Shown: one piece after another, positions 1-9,450 of the stretch
How the letters are laid out: every line of letters begins with the position of its first letter
Position numbering within the stretch: position 1 is the first letter of the stretch
Assembly (NCBI GenBank): GCA_021613535.1
Contig: CP075495.1
Coordinates: 10,478,001-10,542,000 of the forward strand
Direction of reading: 5' to 3'
From: Adineta vaga
Taxonomy: Eukaryota; Animalia; Rotifera
DNA length: 64,000 bases
Program-made: the position numbers and the translations under genes
The notes under the pieces: model-generated
What the model was told of the DNA's origin: nothing
Database searches by the model: none
The model's input: the letters and a program-made list of their open reading frames with translations, nothing else

Positions 1-301
1 AAAAACAAAATCATACAATGGCCAATTTTTTTGCTGAAAATCAACAAAAGAAAAAGAAAACAAGATAGTACTTCACTAACAGTACTTCGATTCAATTTTC
101 TCCGTTTTTTTTTCTATATTATAACATTAAAGAATGCAAAGATTTATTCTTTATGTTTTTTAGATATATTTACCTGCGAAAAAAGAACTTTATTTCAATA
201 CGTAAGCATTCCATTCGCAATATCTGTTAACATCACACCGTATACTTCATTCTTCGGTTTTAGAATGGCATATTTATGAATTGTGAAGAAAAAGAATTTC
301 A

Positions 302-3300
302 ATGCCTGGTGTTAATTTAAATTATGTAAGCTGATCTTTTTCGTCTTTAAAAGAAAAAATGGAAATATTAACTTTTCTTTCACTAAAATTTAGCATTCGT
401 CGATTTCTGTTGATCAATCTTCAACATATAATCATTCTTCTCAACAATATCTTTATTCATCGATTCAATCACAATTTTATCCATATGAATCTCATTCACA
501 ATTAACAAATTCTAGTGATCATCAAGAGAAATCGACTCAACGATCTCTCCCATTATCAACTAATTTGAAAAATACATCAATACAAAAAAAAACTGATTGT
601 AAATCTTCTAAGAATTGTTTTTTTTCTTCCTCATCCAATCAAACGTGTAAATTTAGGGAATGAAATTGAAATAACTGGAAATGTTCGAAATCTTTCTCCA
701 ACGTTATGGACATTATCTCAATTAACTGTTTTATATCTAAATGACAATCAACTAACGCGTCTACCATCGGAAATTGCTTGTTTAAATAATCTAGTCACAC
801 TTGATTTATCAAACAACAAACTCAGAAATCTTCCCTCAGAAATCGGTAAGTTTCATTTGAAATGAATTGATGAAGAATATCGTTTATTTTTTTGAATGCA
901 TATTTTCTTGTGTATAATATCTGTAACGAATGGCGGCAACGTCTCGTTTGCTTCACTGCATGTAAACGTCAGTTTTTATCATTCTTTTTTCTCGATATAC
1001 AAATCTGTCATGCATTATATTTTGACATTGTAAACACTGCCATCTGATTGTTTTGATTGATAGGTGATTTGATAACTTTACGTGAATTAAATTTAACAAA
1101 CAATTCAATTCGAAACTTACCATATGAAATTGGAAAATTATTTCGTTTACAAACCTTAGGTAATTAATTAGTTTTCATCAGAAAAATATATTAATTGAAA
1201 TGAAAATGATTCAATAGGTTTATTAGGAAATCCATTACCCAATGATATTCTTTCGATTTTTATGGAAACAAATGGTTTACACAAATTATTAACATATTTT
1301 CTGGATAATTATTCATCATCATTCAATGGTATTATAAATGAAAAACTGTTTTTTTTTCTTTTCCGATTGCCATGAGTTTACTTTTCTCTTCATCATCATC
1401 ATCATCATCATCATTTTCTTTTGTTCTCGCAATTGTAAAGTTTCAGAATATAGACTTGATTCTTACTACGTTCGTGAATTTCTCTTGTCAACATGGCATC
1501 AAACAAATGCAAACGAGAATTTCAATTCATCGGTAAGTTAATGATAAATATCGAATTCGTACTGGAGAAATAATAAAGAATATCTTGACCTCTTACTATT
1601 ATTGCTTGCTTAGTCAACGGTCATTGTTTCGTTCCGAGGGCTTCAATGTTTACTCATTTAGTTCGAATTGAAAGTGTTCACGTTGCAAACAAAGAAGACG
1701 ATTAATTTTCTCTTTTTCTTCTTCTTCTTCTTCTTTTGATCAAATAAATGAAGTTCTTCAAGAAATATTACTTATTCAAATGTATGATGAAAGACTATAT
1801 AATTAGAAGAAAAAAACAATTTTCCGTTTGTAACTACAGTTGAAATTGTACTCTTACATTTTCTTCGCGATTTGGCGATGTTTTTTAATTTTTCTTTGTA
1901 AGTATGCATGAAATTTTTTGCTTTGACAACTATCAATAGTAATGTTGTTATCAAGGTGTACAGAGGTAGCTTTTAGTGTATCGATTGTTTACATATAGTA
2001 ACACGAAAGAGAAAGTGTTCGAAAGAAAAAAGAAAAAAGTAGAATTAAAATAAAGTTTCGGGCGCTTTTTCATTGGTAAATATACTTTATTCTACCATAT
2101 AAATTTAAATATTTCAATCTGTTATTGATTTTTGTGGTTAACAATTTAACTGTGCATAGAATAACAGATTTTTCTTTCTAGTTTTGATTTCAATCGAAAG
2201 GTAAAAGTACAATACTGTATAATCATTACTGTTTTCTTTTTCTTCTTTTGTTTAATTGTTAGTTAATAAGATATGCCGTCATTTCAATCAAATTGCTAAT
2301 AGTACATAGAGAATGAAAATAAGTAAAGTTATTAGGCGTTTAAAAAAATGAGACAAACTACCATCTAAATAAGTATATGTCATTGTATTTCATGCATCAT
2401 TGCTCATAGCCAATCGTAGTATATGTACATATACGAGTAAACGTTAAAAAAAGTGAGAGAAATAAGAAAAAGAAAGAAGATGAGTTCTAACTCGAAATGA
2501 CGATCGAAAAAATTTTCTGTATATGGTAAAAATCGTTGTTGTTGTTATTATTTACAGGTATGAAAGTAAAAACCTTGATTGCAATTAAGCAGACAATACC
2601 CATATGTTTGTGTTTTTCTTTCGCTTTTCCTTTAACATCGATTTTATTATGTACCCGCTTTTCTTTTGGACGATTTTTTCTTTTTCTTCTTCTTCGTCTC
2701 ATTATTTAATGATATCATCATGATTAGGAATACGTTGATACAGTAAAGTGACGTGGACAGAAAAAAAAAGGAAACGTGACTTATTAAAGGTAAAAATCAA
2801 ATGAAAACGAATCAATCTCGAGATGGATTTGTTGAGTTTCCTCAATGAAGTACTTTTTTGTTCTCTTATCCGTTGTCTTATTCATTTTTCCGTCGTTTAC
2901 TTTCCAGGGTTACATTCATAATCGTTTCTTATTTTACCAAGTGAATATCTGTCGCCATTTCTCTCTTCAACATTCACCGATGCGCTTGAAGCTTTATTAA
3001 ATCATCAAGAGAGCTGTTTTTGCCATTTTTTTTTCAAAATTAACCAACGCAATTAGTATCGACTGAGAAGATGCGTGAATATGCCAACTTTTGTTTGCTG
3101 TTCATTCTCATCGAACCGAAAATAGACAAGAAAAAGAACCAGTACGATCCAGGGACGGTGAACTACACTATAAGGTTTTTCTTTTCTTTTCGACGAGGTT
3201 TTTTCTCCTTCTGTCTCTCTTTCGATGCGCTGAACAGAAAAAAAGAAAAAACGAGATTATTTTCCTTCTATTCGTCGTCTTTCTTTCTTATGTTCGATGA

Positions 3301-6300
3301 TTTGACAACGAGAAACATGTTGAGAAACAGGAGAAGAAGAGGAACAAAATGAGAAAAATATAATCGAGGTCTTATTAATATAACTTCTTCTATATTTATT
3401 TCTTCCGAATTGTAAAGAAACTAGTAACAATAGGTTTAGTATATTAAAAAAAACTAACAACAAGACGACTTTTTTTTTTATTCTGTTTCTGAGAGAATGA
3501 AATGCGCTCGATCACTTTAAAATTATTGAGAAAAAATAAACAGCAAAAACGAAACAAAATCAACGAAGAATTTCTCTTCTGATTGTCTCTCTTAACCTTG
3601 CCAATTCTGTTTCTCTCACACTATTATGAACACAACGATGACGAACGATCATGATCATTACAACGAGACAAGAGTAATGAGTGTGAGTGAAGCAATTGAC
3701 CTTCCTTTTTCATTTCTCTTTTTCTTCTATTTCGTTCTGATAATAACACTTCTAAGAAGCAATCTGTACATAAAAGAAAATATCAACTCAATCAAATATT
3801 TTTGTAATATTGATTGAAATAAGTTCCAGTTGGTTCCTCACTTCTTCTTCTTTTTCTTTCTTTTTTTTCGTAACATCGGCGGGGAGAATACGAATAAGAA
3901 AAGAAAGTCAAGTATACATATGTTGTACATTAACTTTATATACGTTTTTTTTCTTCTTTCTCATGTTTTAGTGGAACAAAATGACGAATTCATCTTTTTG
4001 ATACCAATTCAATAATCTATTTTTTTACTATTTTTTACTTGGTTCATATATTTCGCAAAAAAAAACATATTTAACTCATGTGTTCAGTAACTGAACCACG
4101 TCGTGCTACTGTTTCATGTAAAAATATTTTTACATCATCGACAAACGATCGTTCGACACCGTCGTCATCAGCATCAGCATCATTTCGACGATATAATAAT
4201 AATAATGCGAATGTCAAACGAAATCCTAATATGTATACGAATGTTTTCATTCGATCATCTAATCATTCGACAAAAAAACAACAACAAAGATTAGTTGACA
4301 TAACTAATGACAACCATTCCAATTCGAATGTCTTTCATATTCCATTTTCAACCGAACAAAGTTATGATAATGGAAAAAAATCTTTATCAAGTACAATTAA
4401 TAATACTAAACTACTCAGGACATCATTAAACCCGCTTTCACCAGCATTCTTTTCTACTCGTCATACATCATTATTAACGTCAGAACAAAAACAAGATACC
4501 CCATTAAGGTATGTTACTCTTTGTGAATAAAGAATCTAATTTGAAGAAGAAAGATTTTTGAGTTCAACCATTAATTACCCTAGAAAGACTTCTTTTATGT
4601 AATAACATATTGTATTGACTTTTTCAGTATATCTTTCAACTTTTGTCTTGATTTATAGACATGACTTTTTTTTATCTTTGTAGACAAACATACGTCCTTA
4701 AATCAATATTTTCTTTCAATTTCTAGTCATCCAAAAGTTGTTCTACTATCTGAAACATCTGATTATGGTAGTGGAACTGATCCTGAACTTCAATCAATTC
4801 AACATATATCACCACTTACAGATTCTTCACCATTTACATACGATATTGATAAATCATCATTTACATTTCCAACCATGGATCCCAATTCTAATTCATCAGC
4901 ACAAACTCGTCGTACATCTCTTTCCTCATCATCATCATCTTCATCTTCTTCACCTACATCTCCATCATCAAGTATAAGTAATCTATCATCCTATTCATCT
5001 TCATCGGAATTACAAACAACTTTCAATAATTCCAATCGTTTATCAAATAAAAAACATCTATCAATTAATAATAATACTTCGAATAACATGATTAATTGTC
5101 ATTGTGAAAAAGAAAATTCTTCATCACGTAAACGTAATCGACTTACTTCCCACCCAATTCGACGGTACACAACAGCAAATTATTGTGAAACTTGTCAAAT
5201 AAGACGAACGAAATTAAATTCTCGTTCAAAACTTCATTCCAATCGACAAACGAAACAACAACGTTCGAACAATCGATCTTATGATGAAATTTTCACACCA
5301 GTCAAATTTACCGTTGATTTAACTGGTCTGAATATCCATTATACCATTGAATATCATGATAATATGAAATGTACATGTTCAACAACATTAGTTTCATGTT
5401 ACAATTCATCTCGTTGTAAATATTCAGTTCTCAATGACTGGTCACCGATATTAATGATGAATTCATCCAATGAATATAATAATGAGTTGTATTATATTGA
5501 CACAAGTAACAATTTATGGCTGCCACCAACAATACCACCTGCTTTTAATTATCATGATTTATGTTTAACAAAATTTCATGAGAATAATCTTTCATCAGTT
5601 TATTTTGATGATAATGCCATTGTTGATGCCAGTGAACATATATCACCGTATTATCTTCGACGTATGATACCATTTATTGATAGAGAGTGTGAGAAAAATT
5701 GAAGAGAAAAGAGAACTAATATAAATACTAACTCATGGCGATCGATGTTCAGTTTTTTTTTCTTTCTTCTTCTTCTTCTTCTTCTGAAATTTCATTTTCT
5801 TTTTGTTTAGCTATTCAACCACCACCAACACGTGGATGGCTCCGTTTAGCCTCGCCAAATACTACCCAACCTACAGCGATTTTTACAGTAATGAATTATA
5901 ATATTCTCTGTGATAAATATGCGACCAGACATGTTTATGGTTATTGTCCATCTTGGGCATTAAAATGGGACTATCGTCGAAAACAAATACTTGATGAATT
6001 ACGTTCCTATGCCGCCGATATAATTGCATTACAAGTAAGAAAAATTAGAAGAAAAAAAAACAAGTGCATTTAAGCGAAGCAAATTTCGATACAGCTTGAA
6101 TCTTTTTTTTTTGTTGATCATGTATGGTACTCTAGATTAATGAAGTGAAAATTTTTCTTCTACTTCACTAACTTGTTGAGAAGTAGAACATATCCATCGT
6201 ACGCTAGTTGTCTTTGATTTTTATTTAATAGAGATTATTTAACAAAATTATAATTTCTCTCTTTTTCTTTTTTGTCTATTGTAGGAAATCGAAACAGATC

Positions 6301-7482
6301 AATTTCATTTATATTTTCTACCTGAATTACAAAAACTTGGTTATGATGGTGTTTTTAGTCCGAAATCACGTGCAAGAACAATGTGCGAACAAGATCGACG
6401 ATTTGTCGATGGTTGTGCTATTTTCTATCGACAATCAAAGTAATAGGAAATACAAATCATCTTATGTTTTCTATCGTATTTTGTTTTAATATAGATTTCG
6501 CTTGATCAAAGATTATCTTGTTGAATTCAATCAATTAGCAATGACAGCATCGAATGGTCTCGAATATCATGATATGATGAATCGTGTAATGACAAAAGAT
6601 AACATTGGTCTTGTTGCTGTACTCGAAACAAAAGACGAAATTTATTCACATTCATTTTCGAATAGTAAATGAAAATGAAAATTGATGATTAATTTTTATT
6701 TGTTCATTCTCTAGGTGTTTTATCATCGGATCATAAACAAATATTATTTGTTTGTACTGCACATATTCATTGGGATCCAGAATATTCAGATGTAAAAGTT
6801 GTGCAAACATTAATGTTATTATCCGAATTAAAAATGATTATGGAAGATGCGATGCAAAAACATCGAACGAATACTAATGTATCTACTAATTGTGCATCAG
6901 CACCACTTGTTCTTTGCGGAGATTTTAATTCTTTGCCAGATTCAGGTAACTAATTCAAATAAAAAACAATGATTTCGTTTCATTTCTTCTATGGAATAGG
7001 TGTCATTGAATTGATGCGTAATGGAAAAATTTCATTGAATCATGTCGATTTTAAAGATATTCAATATGAATCATATCTACAAAAAATCAATCGTTTAGAT
7101 GTGACATCGACTCAAAGTACCGATATTGTACATCATTTCAAATTACAATCAGCTTATGAAACAACATCATCGCCTATTATGCCTTATACAAATTATACGT
7201 AAATATTTGTTGATAGTTTTTGAATAAATATCAATTGTATTTTCCGACGATTCTAGATATGATTTTAAAGGTATTATTGACTATGTATTCTTTTCATCAC
7301 AGTTAATGCGCGTACTCGGTGTTTTGGGACCACTTGATCCTGAATGGTTACAATCAAATAAGATTGTTGGTTGTCCACAGCCGAATGTACCATCTGATCA
7401 TTTTTCTTTACTTGTTGAATTTGAATTAAATCCAATCACACAAAATTCAACAACAAATACTATCAGTGAAAAATATCAATGA
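302..7482 (+). CDS. CNOT6: CCR4-NOT subunit 6 (CCR4) deadenylase, LRR + EEP nuclease. Exons read as 302-325, 394-598, 657-845, 1064-1159, 1218-1328, 5811-6034, 6285-6439, 6495-6664, 6715-6945, 7000-7198, 7257-7482
   Basis: Spliced translation gives the LRR region WNEIEITGNVRNLSPTLWTLSQLTVLYLNDNQLTRLPSEIACLNNLVTLDLSNNKLRNLPSEIG and the EEP motifs YNILCDKYAT, ALQEIE, AHIHWDPEYSDVK, LCGDFNSLPDSG, TNYT-DFKGIIDY and PSDHF. Junctions are GT-AG and phase-consistent. The start codon is the least certain part. Confidence 0.93.
4078..5702 (+). CDS. Two-exon Ser/Asn-rich coding unit inside the large CCR4 intron (4078-4508, 4727-5688 or 5702): alternative N-terminus of CCR4, or a nested gene
   Basis: ORFs of 150 and 275 aa join in frame through AG|gtatgt (4508) and ttctag| (4726), giving about 465 codons in AT-rich DNA. 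A donor-like gtgaga at 5689 is in phase with the CCR4 exon at 5811. Confidence 0.7.
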
Positions 7483-8028
7483 TAACATATGATTCAACAT
7501 GAAAATCATAACATTTCTTATGTGCATTTCGAGAAAACAACAAAAATCTCTACATACGGTGAAATCTCAGGGGTACATAATGGTCATTTCGATTTCTATT
7601 CTTCTATGCATTTGTGTGACTCTATTCTTCGATATGTTTCTCAGTTTAACTTCTACAAGAATATGGTCATTGATCTTCTTCTCATTTCGATTTGTACGCA
7701 CGTAGGTATTACTAATCGTACAAATCATCAAAATATGTATACTTATTTTCGTTTTCTCTTGTTTTTTCTAATGTATGTATTGATCACTGAATTCATTTAC
7801 TTCATTATTAATCGCTCTCACGATAAGAATGAATTTGTTCATTCATATTTCTTGATGACAGTTGTACACACACACATACATACAAATACAATCACAAACT
7901 TTTCTTAATTACTTTTTCTCTTGCATTATTCCTGTTGTTTCTTTACCTACCTATGTGTATTTGACGACAACATTAAAAAAAACGTCGTTCAATAAAACAA
8001 AAATAAAATAGTGATTGAAAACAAACGA

Positions 8029-9450
8029 TTAAGATAGGAACATGTTAGAATTTTCTTCTGCTGATATAAATCGATCAATAAGGTCAAATGCAGCTCGTGG
8101 TTGTTCAGATGGAACCATATGACCAGCATTACGAACCCATGCAATAAAAAATGAATGTGCTTGTTTGATATATCCAGCTACTTCTCGATCATCATCTTTT
8201 ACTTTCCAAACTTTGCGTTCCGCATTGCGAACGTCTTCTGCATATTTCCATTGGAATTTATCTATCCATTCCATGGTTAATGATGATGCGATAATGACAT
8301 CCAGTAAACCATTATAGATTAAGACTTTATAGTTATTGTTTGCAATAACTGTAACCTTATCAACAATTGACTGCATCATATCATTAGCAAGAGCGATACC
8401 GACTGCATCACCATCATTATAAGTTAAATTTCCCACATGAATTTTTTGACGATTGTTACTTGCTGTTACCCATGGAACATAATAGTTAAAGGAATCTGGC
8501 ATTTGTGTTTGTAAATAATTATAGATATTATGCAAACCAGTTTTATTAGTATAGAAATCATCTAATAAATCACTAAATAATTCATAGGCAATCTGATATT
8601 GTTTCAATTCAATCGCATTTCGTGCTAATTCAGATTCTAAATTAACGCGTTCCATTTCTATCTCATCGATCAATCCAAATTGATAGAAAACTGGCCCATA
8701 ATTCCATTGATTGTATGGATCGATTAAACCATCACCGATAGCCATACCTTTCAGATTGATTTTTACTTTTGCTTGTGGATTTTCTATATGGATCTTATAT
8801 ACAATAGCTGGAACATATTTTCCACCATACGATTCACCAGTAACATAAAATGGACTTGGAATATGTTCAGGGAATATTTGGAAGAATTGTGTTAACATTG
8901 AATATAAATCACGGGCAACTTCATCTTCATTACGTACATAACCATCTTCACTCTTAGTAAAACTATAACCTGTTCCAACTGGTTGATCGATGTAAAGTAG
9001 ATGATATTTTGAGTTCCAAGTTATTTCACTTGGATGAAGTTTCTGTTCTTTATCAACCATTATTGGACCTTGTTCAGCAAATAAACCAAATAATGATGAT
9101 GCGCCTGGTCCACCTTGTAGCCAAACAAGCAATGGTGCACTTGCATTTCCAGTTTGCGAAGGAAAGAACCAAAAGAACAGATTGCTTTGATGAGTTTTAT
9201 TGACTGTAAGATAACCCGAATACGATGGAAATGAATAATCAGGTTGAAGATTAACTCGACTTAGATTTCTAGCCTGATCGATTTGACCAGATTCAATGTA
9301 AGGTGTAAGAAAAAGTGGTTGACCAGGATCATCGTTAGGCTGTATAGGTGTTTGTGGAATACTTGCTAATCGACGTCTTAAAGGATCAAAGGCTTGGATG
9401 AAAGTAAATAGATGAACAAGCACGAACAGTAAATGATAGAAATACTTCAT
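8029..9450 (-). CDS. CPVL: Secreted serine carboxypeptidase, peptidase family S10, CPVL/venom carboxypeptidase-like; intronless, copy A
   Basis: 473 aa with signal peptide, WLQGGPG, YIDQPVGTGYS, catalytic GESYGG (Ser), NGLLD (Asp) and AGHMVP (His). Confidence 0.92.
   Translation of the reverse strand: MKYFYHLLFVLVHLFTFIQAFDPLRRRLASIPQTPIQPNDDPGQPLFLTPYIESGQIDQARNLSRVNLQPDYSFPSYSGYLTVNKTHQSNLFFWFFPSQTGNASAPLLVWLQGGPGASSLFGLFAEQGPIMVDKEQKLHPSEITWNSKYHLLYIDQPVGTGYSFTKSEDGYVRNEDEVARDLYSMLTQFFQIFPEHIPSPFYVTGESYGGKYVPAIVYKIHIENPQAKVKINLKGMAIGDGLIDPYNQWNYGPVFYQFGLIDEIEMERVNLESELARNAIELKQYQIAYELFSDLLDDFYTNKTGLHNIYNYLQTQMPDSFNYYVPWVTASNNRQKIHVGNLTYNDGDAVGIALANDMMQSIVDKVTVIANNNYKVLIYNGLLDVIIASSLTMEWIDKFQWKYAEDVRNAERKVWKVKDDDREVAGYIKQAHSFFIAWVRNAGHMVPSEQPRAAFDLIDRFISAEENSNMFLS

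What the first reader, a model, noticed from the sequence alone, without database searches (positions are those of the whole stretch)
4078..5812. Hidden alternative 5' exons could replace the CAF1-binding LRR of CCR4 with a roughly 465-aa disordered N-terminus
Seen: the only large intron of CCR4 (1329-5810, versus about 50-220 nt for the others) sits exactly between the LRR and the nuclease domain. It contains a same-strand two-exon reading frame whose end has a donor-like T|gtgaga at 5688/5689 in phase 1, so T+CT (Ser) reads straight into IQPPPTRGW of the nuclease exon. Established: the CCR4 LRR docks the enzyme on CAF1 and so into CCR4-NOT. Inference: an internal promoter produces an LRR-less deadenylase that works outside CCR4-NOT with a different targeting module, so one locus would encode alternative deadenylase recruitment routes. 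I do not know of this architecture being described in rotifers.
Basis: partly seen in the sequence, partly recalled or inferred. Interest (0 to 1): 0.8.

Follow-up and report, generated by a model that had tools for sequence, protein, structure and literature searches.

The report
Conserved cassette exons inside rotifer CCR4

Summary
Observation confirmed. 4078-4508 plus 4727-5688 is one open frame of 464 codons. It ends at a phase-1 GT (5688|5689) that fits the nuclease exon at 5811.

It is real coding sequence. About 35 bdelloid-only relatives were found, with dN/dS 0.19-0.44. They lie in this intron in every locus fetched: both CCR4 loci of this genome (this window on C2, and C5), Adineta, Rotaria and unnamed lineages.

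It is not a free-standing nested gene. Two spliced transcript-like contigs of a related species carry it on one RNA with spliced nuclease exons, and one of them starts at the CCR4 5'UTR with the LRR exons. Both retain the 104-nt interval, so the frame stops.

The proposed junction appears only in 18 of 22 automated gene models from seven species, never in RNA. Sequence constraints favour a working donor:
- GT is kept through Cys-to-Arg changes.
- Conservation ends at GTGAG.
- The stop position drifts.

New here: a covarying intronic helix (box A 1364-1378, box B 5730-5744) brackets the cassette. An internal promoter is not shown. The scan noted the same idea on the C5 copy (s1-489645).

The parts
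302..1328 (+). CCR4 5' coding exons: 302-325 (ATG), 394-598, LRR exons 657-845, 1064-1159, 1218-1328 (donor G|GTATTA, phase 1)
   Evidence: Reading. tblastn and blastn to transcript contig L015 and to bdelloid CCR4 proteins P0036-P0038.
1364..1378 (+). Box A, 37 nt after the LRR donor. It is the reverse complement of box B.
   Evidence: It forms a 15-bp helix with 5730-5744 (one G.U). Homologous boxes occur in 8 loci, with compensatory changes at 3 pairs.
1447..1532 (+). Alternative non-coding or leader exon (acceptor tttcag, donor GTAAGT at 1533)
   Evidence: In L015 the equivalent exon is spliced from this donor to the cassette acceptor. Genomic L004 has AAAG|GTGAGT there.
2262..2436 (+). 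Alternative leader exon. Both ends are inferred. The core 2345-2427 is about 82% identical across lineages.
   Evidence: L001 positions 1-168 are colinear with genomic L004 and then jump 1.36 kb to the cassette acceptor.
3972..4508 (+). Cassette exon 1: acceptor AG 3970-3971, conserved 6-codon uORF 3981-4001, ATG 4078, donor GTATGT at 4509
   Evidence: Two different upstream exons join this acceptor in L001 and L015.
4727..5688 (+). Cassette exon 2. The frame is open to TGA 5700-5702 if unspliced. Phase-1 donors lie at 5661|5662 (GTATGA) and 5688|5689 (GTGAGA).
5689..5810 (+). Interval before the nuclease exon. It looks like an intron (divergent, indel-rich, pyrimidine tract, AG) but is retained in the related transcript contigs.
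5730..5744 (+). Box B, the conserved island inside the interval and the partner of box A
   Evidence: In the C5 ohnologue the pair is the top inverted repeat of the intron (24 nt, 92%).
5811..7482 (+). EEP nuclease exons 5811-6034, 6285-6439, 6495-6664, 6725-6945, 7000-7198, 7257-7482 (stop TGA 7480-7482)
   Evidence: Pfam PF03372 on exon 1 (24.0 bits against a cut-off of 24.5 for this 74-aa piece). Frames. Full-length relatives carry PF03372. Spliced in L015.

Best explanation
The two-exon frame is a conserved, bdelloid-specific coding cassette that belongs to the CCR4 (CNOT6-like) transcription unit. It lies in the intron between the LRR exons and the nuclease exons, together with two non-coding leader exons.

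The pre-mRNA has two routes.
1. The LRR donor (1328) joins the nuclease acceptor (5811) and gives canonical CCR4. A conserved intronic RNA helix probably helps this route. Box A lies just after the LRR donor and box B just before the nuclease exon, so their pairing loops out the whole cassette and brings the two splice sites together.
2. The leader exons and cassette exons are spliced in. In these RNAs the last short intron (5689-5810), which has a weak GTGAGA donor and contains box B, is slowly or conditionally removed. While it is retained, the RNA encodes the free protein of about 468 aa. When it is removed from donor 5688 or 5661, the same frame runs into the nuclease and gives an LRR-less CCR4 of about 850 aa with a Ser/Asn-rich, probably disordered N-terminus.

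Shown:
- The frame is coding and conserved.
- Its place in the intron is conserved.
- Related species carry it on the same RNA as the nuclease exons, with the interval retained.
- The box A:box B helix covaries.

Inferred:
- The helix affects splicing.
- The fusion junction is used.
- Something (an internal start or a spliced leader) puts the cassette ATG first.
For: Coding and conservation:
- 20 relatives of exon 2 at 45-68% identity, none named and none with a Pfam domain.
- The exhaustive HMM search finds only 15 representatives, all 391 aa or shorter.
- dN/dS is 0.28-0.38 (exon 1) and 0.19-0.44 (exon 2), against 0.02-0.05 for the nuclease exon.

Position:
- The order cassette exon 1, exon 2, about 100 nt, nuclease exon holds in all 20 fetched loci, with LRR exons upstream wherever the locus reaches that far. 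This includes the ohnologous locus on C5 of this genome.

Same RNA:
- L001 (1970 nt) and L015 (4029 nt, 99% identical to L001 where they overlap) lack the introns that genomic relatives have, yet run from the cassette into spliced nuclease exons.
- L015 begins with the CCR4 5'UTR, ATG and spliced LRR exons.
- P0097, from a separate Logan run, also has exon 1 joined to exon 2.

Donor:
- xGT|RAR is kept in 15 of 17 loci. This includes CGT (Arg) replacing TGT (Cys) in L008 and L009, and GTAAAA in L010.
- The two loci without it keep the upstream phase-1 GTATG donor.
- Alignment conservation stops at GTGAG. Indels follow, and the stop lies anywhere from 108 nt upstream of the acceptor to absent altogether.
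- 18 of 22 automated models in 7 species splice the cassette to the nuclease from one or the other donor; the other four read the interval through in frame. The models for A. ricciae, R. magnacalcarata and R. socialis were made by BRAKER with RNA-seq hints (PMC7943196).

Helix:
- A 14-bp core occurs in 8 loci at dG -24 to -34 kcal/mol.
- Full compensatory changes occur at three pairs (C-G/U-A twice, U-A/A-U once).
- It scores above the mean of 60 shuffles in all eight loci and above every shuffle in seven of them (L004: 33 against a shuffle maximum of 36).
- It is the top inverted repeat of the C5 intron.
- In L015 the only two introns retained are the ones that hold box A and box B.
Against: - No RNA contig with the exon 2 to nuclease junction was found. 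The three transcript-like contigs that reach the nuclease exon from upstream (L001, L015, L013) all keep the sequence before it.
- That L001 and L015 are cDNA is inferred from their missing introns. The nature of the JGI samples could not be looked up.
- They come from another species. No reads were laid on this genome.
- TGT is the common Cys codon in AT-rich DNA, so part of the GT conservation could be protein constraint.
- GTGAGA differs from the 12 other donors of this gene, which all have A at +3.
- In L015 the cassette ATG lies behind a 239-aa LRR frame, so that RNA is a poor template for it.
- The A. ricciae copy L014 and the divergent locus L006 lack a convincing helix.
- Canonical LRR-nuclease transcripts were found only for the C5-type locus (P0038, P0041, P0042), not for the window's type.
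Confidence: 0.6

Rival explanations
1. An internal promoter in the big intron drives an mRNA that starts with the cassette ATG and splices 5688 to 5811. Its main product is an LRR-less deadenylase that acts outside CCR4-NOT.
For: - Phase-1 donors are kept in all 17 loci, and conservation ends at the donor.
- 18 of 22 automated models in 7 species splice the cassette to the nuclease.
- The cassette is under purifying selection, so some RNA must present its ATG first.
- The leader exon core 2345-2427 contains a CCAAT-like and a TATA-like motif.
Against: - The only cassette RNAs seen keep the interval and stop.
- One of them starts at the CCR4 promoter.
- L001 begins exactly where genomic L004 has ...ctttag, so its first exon looks internal.
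- No fused ORF from any transcript contig appears among 15 billion proteins.
- Nothing tests CAF1 independence.
Confidence: 0.3
2. An independent orphan gene nested in the CCR4 intron. It makes only the free protein of about 468 aa ending ...ECEKN. The link to nuclease exons in RNA contigs is read-through or unprocessed host pre-mRNA. The in-phase donor is a by-product of a conserved Cys codon.
For: - It has its own ATG, a conserved uORF in the leader, and an in-frame stop soon after the conserved part.
- The stop-containing form is what L001 and L015 show.
- JGI and NCBI also hold stand-alone models (P0001, P0004).
Against: - No transcript ends between the stop and the nuclease exon. In L001 and L015 the downstream nuclease introns are spliced, so these are processed RNAs.
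- The C-terminal tail after ECE is not conserved in sequence or length and is absent in four loci.
- Cys changes to Arg only through CGT, which keeps the GT.
- The gene would need to stay about 100 nt from the host exon in both ohnologues and in all lineages.
Confidence: 0.2
3. A regulatory 'poison' cassette. Including the leader and cassette exons truncates the CCR4 frame after the LRR, giving an LRR-only protein or a decay target, and so tunes CCR4 output. Under this reading the cassette frame itself is secondary.
For: - In L015 the CCR4 frame stops just after the LRR (239 aa), and the nuclease is left untranslatable.
- The non-coding leader exon is highly conserved.
- The covarying helix points to regulated choice.
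Against: A frame of 464 codons kept open across all lineages with dN/dS well below 1 is not expected for a mere poison exon.
Confidence: 0.1

Closest known systems
Canonical CCR4 / CNOT6, CNOT6L / Drosophila twin (LRR + EEP nuclease; the LRR docks on CAF1 within CCR4-NOT)
   Same: Same gene family and same LRR-then-EEP order. Bdelloid transcripts with the canonical junction exist (P0038, P0041, P0042; annotated Adineta vaga protein P0037 at the C5 locus).
   Different: The LRR-EEP intron carries a conserved coding cassette that can be threaded in frame onto the nuclease. I know of no description of this for CCR4 (own knowledge; no paper found).
Automated bdelloid gene models named 'poly(A)-specific ribonuclease' or 'unnamed protein product' (e.g. 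A0A813SPW4_ADIRI = P0034, A0A818QQ61 = P0031, Rotaria magnacalcarata P0113/P0116)
   Same: Exactly the proposed architecture: cassette N-terminus, one bridging residue, then IQPPPTR... nuclease, without LRR.
   Different: They are predictions. They disagree on the donor (5661-type or 5688-type), and some read the interval through or add the LRR in front. None is described or validated.
LRR-less members of the CCR4 EEP family (ANGEL, Nocturnin, PDE12)
   Same: EEP deadenylase-type domain with a different N-terminus and no CAF1-binding LRR (own knowledge).
   Different: Those are separate genes. Here the LRR-less form would come from the same locus and the same nuclease exons as canonical CCR4.
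Long-range intronic RNA pairing that steers splicing (Dscam docking/selector sites, 14-3-3zeta; reverse-complementary matches flanking skipped or circularised exons)
   Same: Two conserved complementary boxes lie in the flanking introns. Pairing is kept by compensatory changes, and the geometry brings a distal donor and acceptor together.
   Different: A single box pair brackets a 1.6-6 kb cassette, not a cluster of mutually exclusive exons. The effect on splicing is untested.
Detained or retained introns
   Same: A short intron persists in RNAs whose other introns are gone (L001, L013, L015).
   Different: Known only from assembled contigs of related species. Nuclear detention or signal-dependent removal is untested.

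Membership tests
CCR4 / CNOT6-type deadenylase gene | EEP (Exo_endo_phos, PF03372) nuclease domain | tested here: met
   Exon 5813-6034 alone scores 24.0 bits (cut-off 24.5). Full-length orthologues at 81-98% identity in that exon carry PF03372.
CCR4 / CNOT6-type deadenylase gene | N-terminal leucine-rich repeats on the same transcript as the nuclease | tested here: inconclusive
   LRR exons lie at 657-1328. The canonical LRR-nuclease junction is seen in related-species transcripts of the C5-type locus only (P0038, P0041, P0042). It could not be tested for this locus.
   Phase-1 GT donors occur in all 17 loci. Frame compatibility is shown by the 18 automated models that splice there.
   Not in L001, L013 or L015, nor in any transcript-derived ORF found.
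   L015 starts at the CCR4 5'UTR. The L001 5' end coincides with an acceptor AG in L004.
Independent nested gene | Own 3' end: transcripts terminate before the host's next exon | tested here: not met
   L001 and L015 continue into spliced nuclease exons. This was tested in a related species only.
Long-range RNA bridge regulating splicing | Conserved complementary boxes in the flanking introns, with compensatory substitutions | tested here: met
   8 loci share a 14-bp core with 3 pairs showing both-sided changes. It scores above the shuffle mean in all eight and above every shuffle in seven.
Long-range RNA bridge regulating splicing | Disrupting or restoring the pairing changes splice choice | not testable with these tools
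   Needs minigene or genome-edit experiments.
Retained or detained intron | Intron kept in otherwise fully spliced RNA | tested here: met
   L015 removes eight introns and keeps only the two that hold box A and box B. L001 and L013 keep the interval before the nuclease exon.

The most novel reading that the evidence does not exclude
Box A:box B is an RNA switch, present in both duplicated CCR4 loci and in both Adineta and Rotaria. When it pairs, the LRR is joined to the nuclease and the enzyme is docked to CAF1 in CCR4-NOT. When it is open, the cassette is spliced in, and regulated removal of the last intron yields an LRR-less deadenylase with a disordered, bdelloid-only targeting arm. One locus would then toggle the recruitment route of a core mRNA-decay enzyme, possibly with desiccation and rehydration. 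The same geometry would also allow back-splicing of the cassette into a circular RNA.
Probability: 0.3. Interest if true: 0.8.

Novelty: new variant of a known kind. Interest (0 to 1): 0.6.

Why it matters
CCR4 is docked into CCR4-NOT through its LRR. A conserved, in-frame alternative that drops the LRR would mean that bdelloids can send the same nuclease to mRNAs by a second route. That bears on how these animals reshape their transcriptome during drying and recovery.

Whatever the outcome for the fusion, two results stand on their own:
- An orphan coding cassette has been kept at one spot of a housekeeping gene in both ohnologues and in all lineages sampled.
- A covarying long-range intronic helix brackets it. 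Such helices are rarely documented outside insects and vertebrates.

Both are directly testable with existing Adineta vaga RNA-seq data and with minigenes.

Tried and rejected
I did not resend or trim it, so read laying was never run.
- Pfam on both cassette exons: nothing.
- Rfam on 1-8000: only sub-threshold chance hits.
- AlphaFold2 of exon 2 with 21 sequences: mean pLDDT 40 and no secondary structure. No fold search was made.
- ESM Atlas: no usable hit.
- Consensus fold of the conserved leader exon: -5 kcal/mol, not convincing.
- TACTAAC in box B as the branch point: rejected as the general explanation. It lies 60-90 nt from the acceptor and is absent from the C5-type box.
- ATG 5735 inside box B opening a frame into the nuclease exon: present here but stopped in L001 and L002, so it is chance.
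- Full-length duplexfold energies were uninformative because they pair low-complexity flanks. They were replaced by an ungapped helix score with shuffles.
- The spliced (joined) model was never searched as one sequence. 
Full report
**What is in the window**

The + strand of 302-7482 holds a CCR4/CNOT6-type gene.
- A short N-terminal exon lies at 302-325, followed by exon 394-598.
- Three LRR exons lie at 657-845, 1064-1159 and 1218-1328.
- One 4482-nt intron follows.
- Six nuclease exons run from 5811 to the stop at 7480-7482.

The first nuclease exon alone scores 24.0 bits on Exo_endo_phos (cut-off 24.5). Full-length relatives carry PF03372.

- ATG 4078, exon to 4508.
- A 218-nt intron.
- Exon 4727-5688.
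- T|GTGAGA in phase 1, and TGA at 5700-5702.
- T plus CT of the nuclease exon gives Ser-IQPPPTRGW.

The genome has 100.8 Mb in 6 contigs. The annotated Adineta vaga protein I4U23_024855 (P0037) maps to its contig C5, whose length equals that protein's contig of record. I therefore take the genome for Adineta vaga.

**The frame is a real, bdelloid-only coding sequence**

- The word search with exon 2 gave 20 unnamed proteins at 45-68% identity.
- The exhaustive profile search of 1.84 billion representatives gave only 15 hits, all 391 aa or shorter.
- No Pfam family, no Atlas neighbour and no confident fold were found (mean pLDDT 40). A Ser/Asn-rich, largely disordered protein is a fair description.
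- dN/dS between lineages is 0.28-0.38 for exon 1 and 0.19-0.44 for exon 2, against 0.02-0.05 for the nuclease exon. Selection is purifying but relaxed.

**Position is conserved**

In every fetched locus, cassette exon 1, exon 2 and a gap of about 100 nt sit directly before the first nuclease exon, and LRR exons lie upstream wherever the locus reaches that far. These loci are four metagenome loci, ENA and Logan contigs, Adineta ricciae, A. steineri, Rotaria magnacalcarata and Rotaria sp. Silwood-1.

This genome has a second, shorter version at C5:9225627-9226535, inside the intron of the CCR4 copy annotated there as canonical LRR + nuclease (P0037). Another first-stage note (s1-489645) flagged that copy independently.

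**It is not a free-standing nested gene**

Contig L001 (JGI 3300056961, 1970 nt) lacks three introns that related genomic loci have:
- a 1.36-kb intron before the cassette;
- the intron between the cassette exons;
- the intron after the first nuclease exon.

It still runs without a break from cassette exon 2 into the nuclease exon.

Contig L015 (JGI 3300056981, 4029 nt, 99% identical to L001 where they overlap) is a full-length RNA. In order it holds:
- a 60-nt 5'UTR and the CCR4 ATG;
- all LRR exons, spliced;
- read-through of the LRR donor into the equivalent of 1329-1532;
- a splice from the 1532-type donor to the cassette acceptor (window 3971|3972, a canonical AG in genomic L004);
- both cassette exons, spliced;
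- the interval before the nuclease exon, retained;
- all nuclease exons, spliced, then the stop and a 3'UTR of about 400 nt.

A third contig from a Logan run gives a protein with cassette exon 1 joined to exon 2 (P0097).

That these contigs are cDNA is my inference, drawn from the missing introns and from two different 5' structures meeting at one acceptor.

Consequences:
- Cassette exon 1 is an internal exon.
- An internal promoter is not needed to transcribe the cassette.
- L001 starts exactly where L004 has ...ctttag, which suggests that its leader exon is internal too.

**The proposed junction**

Against it:
- L001 and L015 keep the 104-nt interval, so the frame stops 17 codons after the donor.
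- L013, from another sample, also keeps 117 nt before the nuclease exon while the next intron is gone.
- No transcript-derived ORF with the junction appeared in any search.

For it:
- The donor xGT|RAR is present in 15 of 17 loci.
- Where Cys is replaced, the replacement is Arg through CGT (L008, L009). The following Glu becomes Lys through AAR (L010). The splice consensus survives although the residues change.
- The two loci that lack this donor (A. ricciae L014, with TAT, and the divergent L006/L007) keep the upstream phase-1 donor C/T|GTATG. Its window equivalent is 5661|5662.
- In a ten-locus alignment, codon-like conservation ends at GTGAG. Indels begin there, and the stop lies anywhere from 108 nt before the acceptor to not at all.
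- 18 of 22 automated models from seven species splice the cassette to the nuclease from one or the other donor. The other four read the interval through in frame, and five of the 22 also put the LRR in front.
- The models for A. ricciae, R. magnacalcarata and R. socialis came from BRAKER with RNA-seq hints (PMC7943196). That does not prove this particular intron was hinted.

I put the existence of a functional fusion mRNA at somewhat under one half.

**A new element: a covarying helix around the cassette**

The conserved island in the interval (window 5730-5744, AACTCATGGCGATCG) is the reverse complement of a conserved island 37 nt after the LRR donor (1364-1378, CGATTGCCATGAGTT).

The pair is present in eight loci of both locus types.
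- The core is 14 bp, extended to 20-24 bp in the C5 type.
- dG is -24 to -34 kcal/mol.
- Three pairs change on both sides (C-G/U-A at two positions, U-A/A-U at one).
- Cells are almost always paired.
- It scores above the mean of 60 shuffles in all eight loci and above every shuffle in seven of them; in L004 it scores 33 against a shuffle maximum of 36.
- In the C5 intron it is the top inverted repeat found without prior assumptions (24 nt, 92%).

Pairing would loop out the cassette and bring donor 1328 next to acceptor 5811. In the C5 type, box B starts 5 nt after the cassette donor, so pairing would also mask that donor.

In L015 the only two retained introns are the two that hold box A and box B.

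The helix is weak in the A. ricciae copy L014, whose LRR donor also looks degenerate, and it is absent in L006.

**Limits**

I did not resend it, so no reads were laid on this genome.
- All RNA evidence comes from related species.
- Each exon was searched separately by reference.

**Comparison and verdict**

The gene is a CCR4/CNOT6 member. The cassette has no known family.

The mechanism resembles known kinds: alternative N-terminal exons, retained or detained introns, and long-range RNA bridges such as the Dscam docking and selector sites, or the complementary introns that flank skipped or circularised exons. It applies them in a way not described for CCR4.

The fused architecture itself already sits unremarked in public protein sets. 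I therefore rate the finding a new variant of a known kind, with interest 0.6.

Noticed in passing
window 1364-1378 and 5730-5744; L025 6852-6875 and 8461-8484: Conserved, covarying complementary boxes bracket the cassette in both CCR4 loci of this genome and in six other lineages. I read this as a long-range intronic RNA helix.
   Followed up: yes
window 2345-2427: The non-coding leader exon core is about 82% identical across Adineta, Rotaria and even the divergent L006. That is more conserved than the cassette coding sequence. It holds an AACCAATCG (CCAAT-like) motif and a TATATG motif. The consensus fold is weak, and the reason for the conservation is unknown.
   Followed up: partly
window 3981-4001: A six-codon upstream ORF (ATG ACG ... 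TGA) in the cassette leader keeps its position and length in L001 and L004, although its inner codons differ.
   Followed up: partly
L026 5272-5775 (= 728 to 225 nt before the window start); also L009 650-1214 and L014 2286-3236: A second, divergent LRR module lies just upstream of the CCR4 start and is annotated as a separate LRR-only gene in A. ricciae.
   Followed up: partly
L025 7627-8458 (G000:C5:9225627-9226458): The ohnologous short cassette has a run of Cys codons and a Tyr/Phe-rich segment. It has the same donor GAGAGT|GTGAGAAG, with box B starting 5 nt after the donor. The official annotation there is canonical CCR4 only.
   Followed up: partly
L014 about 4375 and 8598-8612 (Adineta ricciae): In this copy the 5688-type donor is lost (TAT), the box pair is degenerate, and the LRR donor reads GC. 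The copy may have given up the canonical route.
   Followed up: no
window 5735-6073: The ATG inside box B opens a frame that reads through the acceptor into the nuclease exon in this genome. It is stopped in L001 and L002, so it is probably chance.
   Followed up: yes
L013 1-120: A transcript-like contig from a third JGI sample keeps 117 nt of intron before the first nuclease exon while the next intron is spliced. The gene caller then starts the protein at MNYNIL, giving a nuclease-only frame.
   Followed up: partly
window 8029-9450 (- strand): A serine carboxypeptidase S10 gene lies downstream of CCR4. The same neighbour is seen in L009, L014 and L027-L029, so synteny extends beyond CCR4.
   Followed up: no
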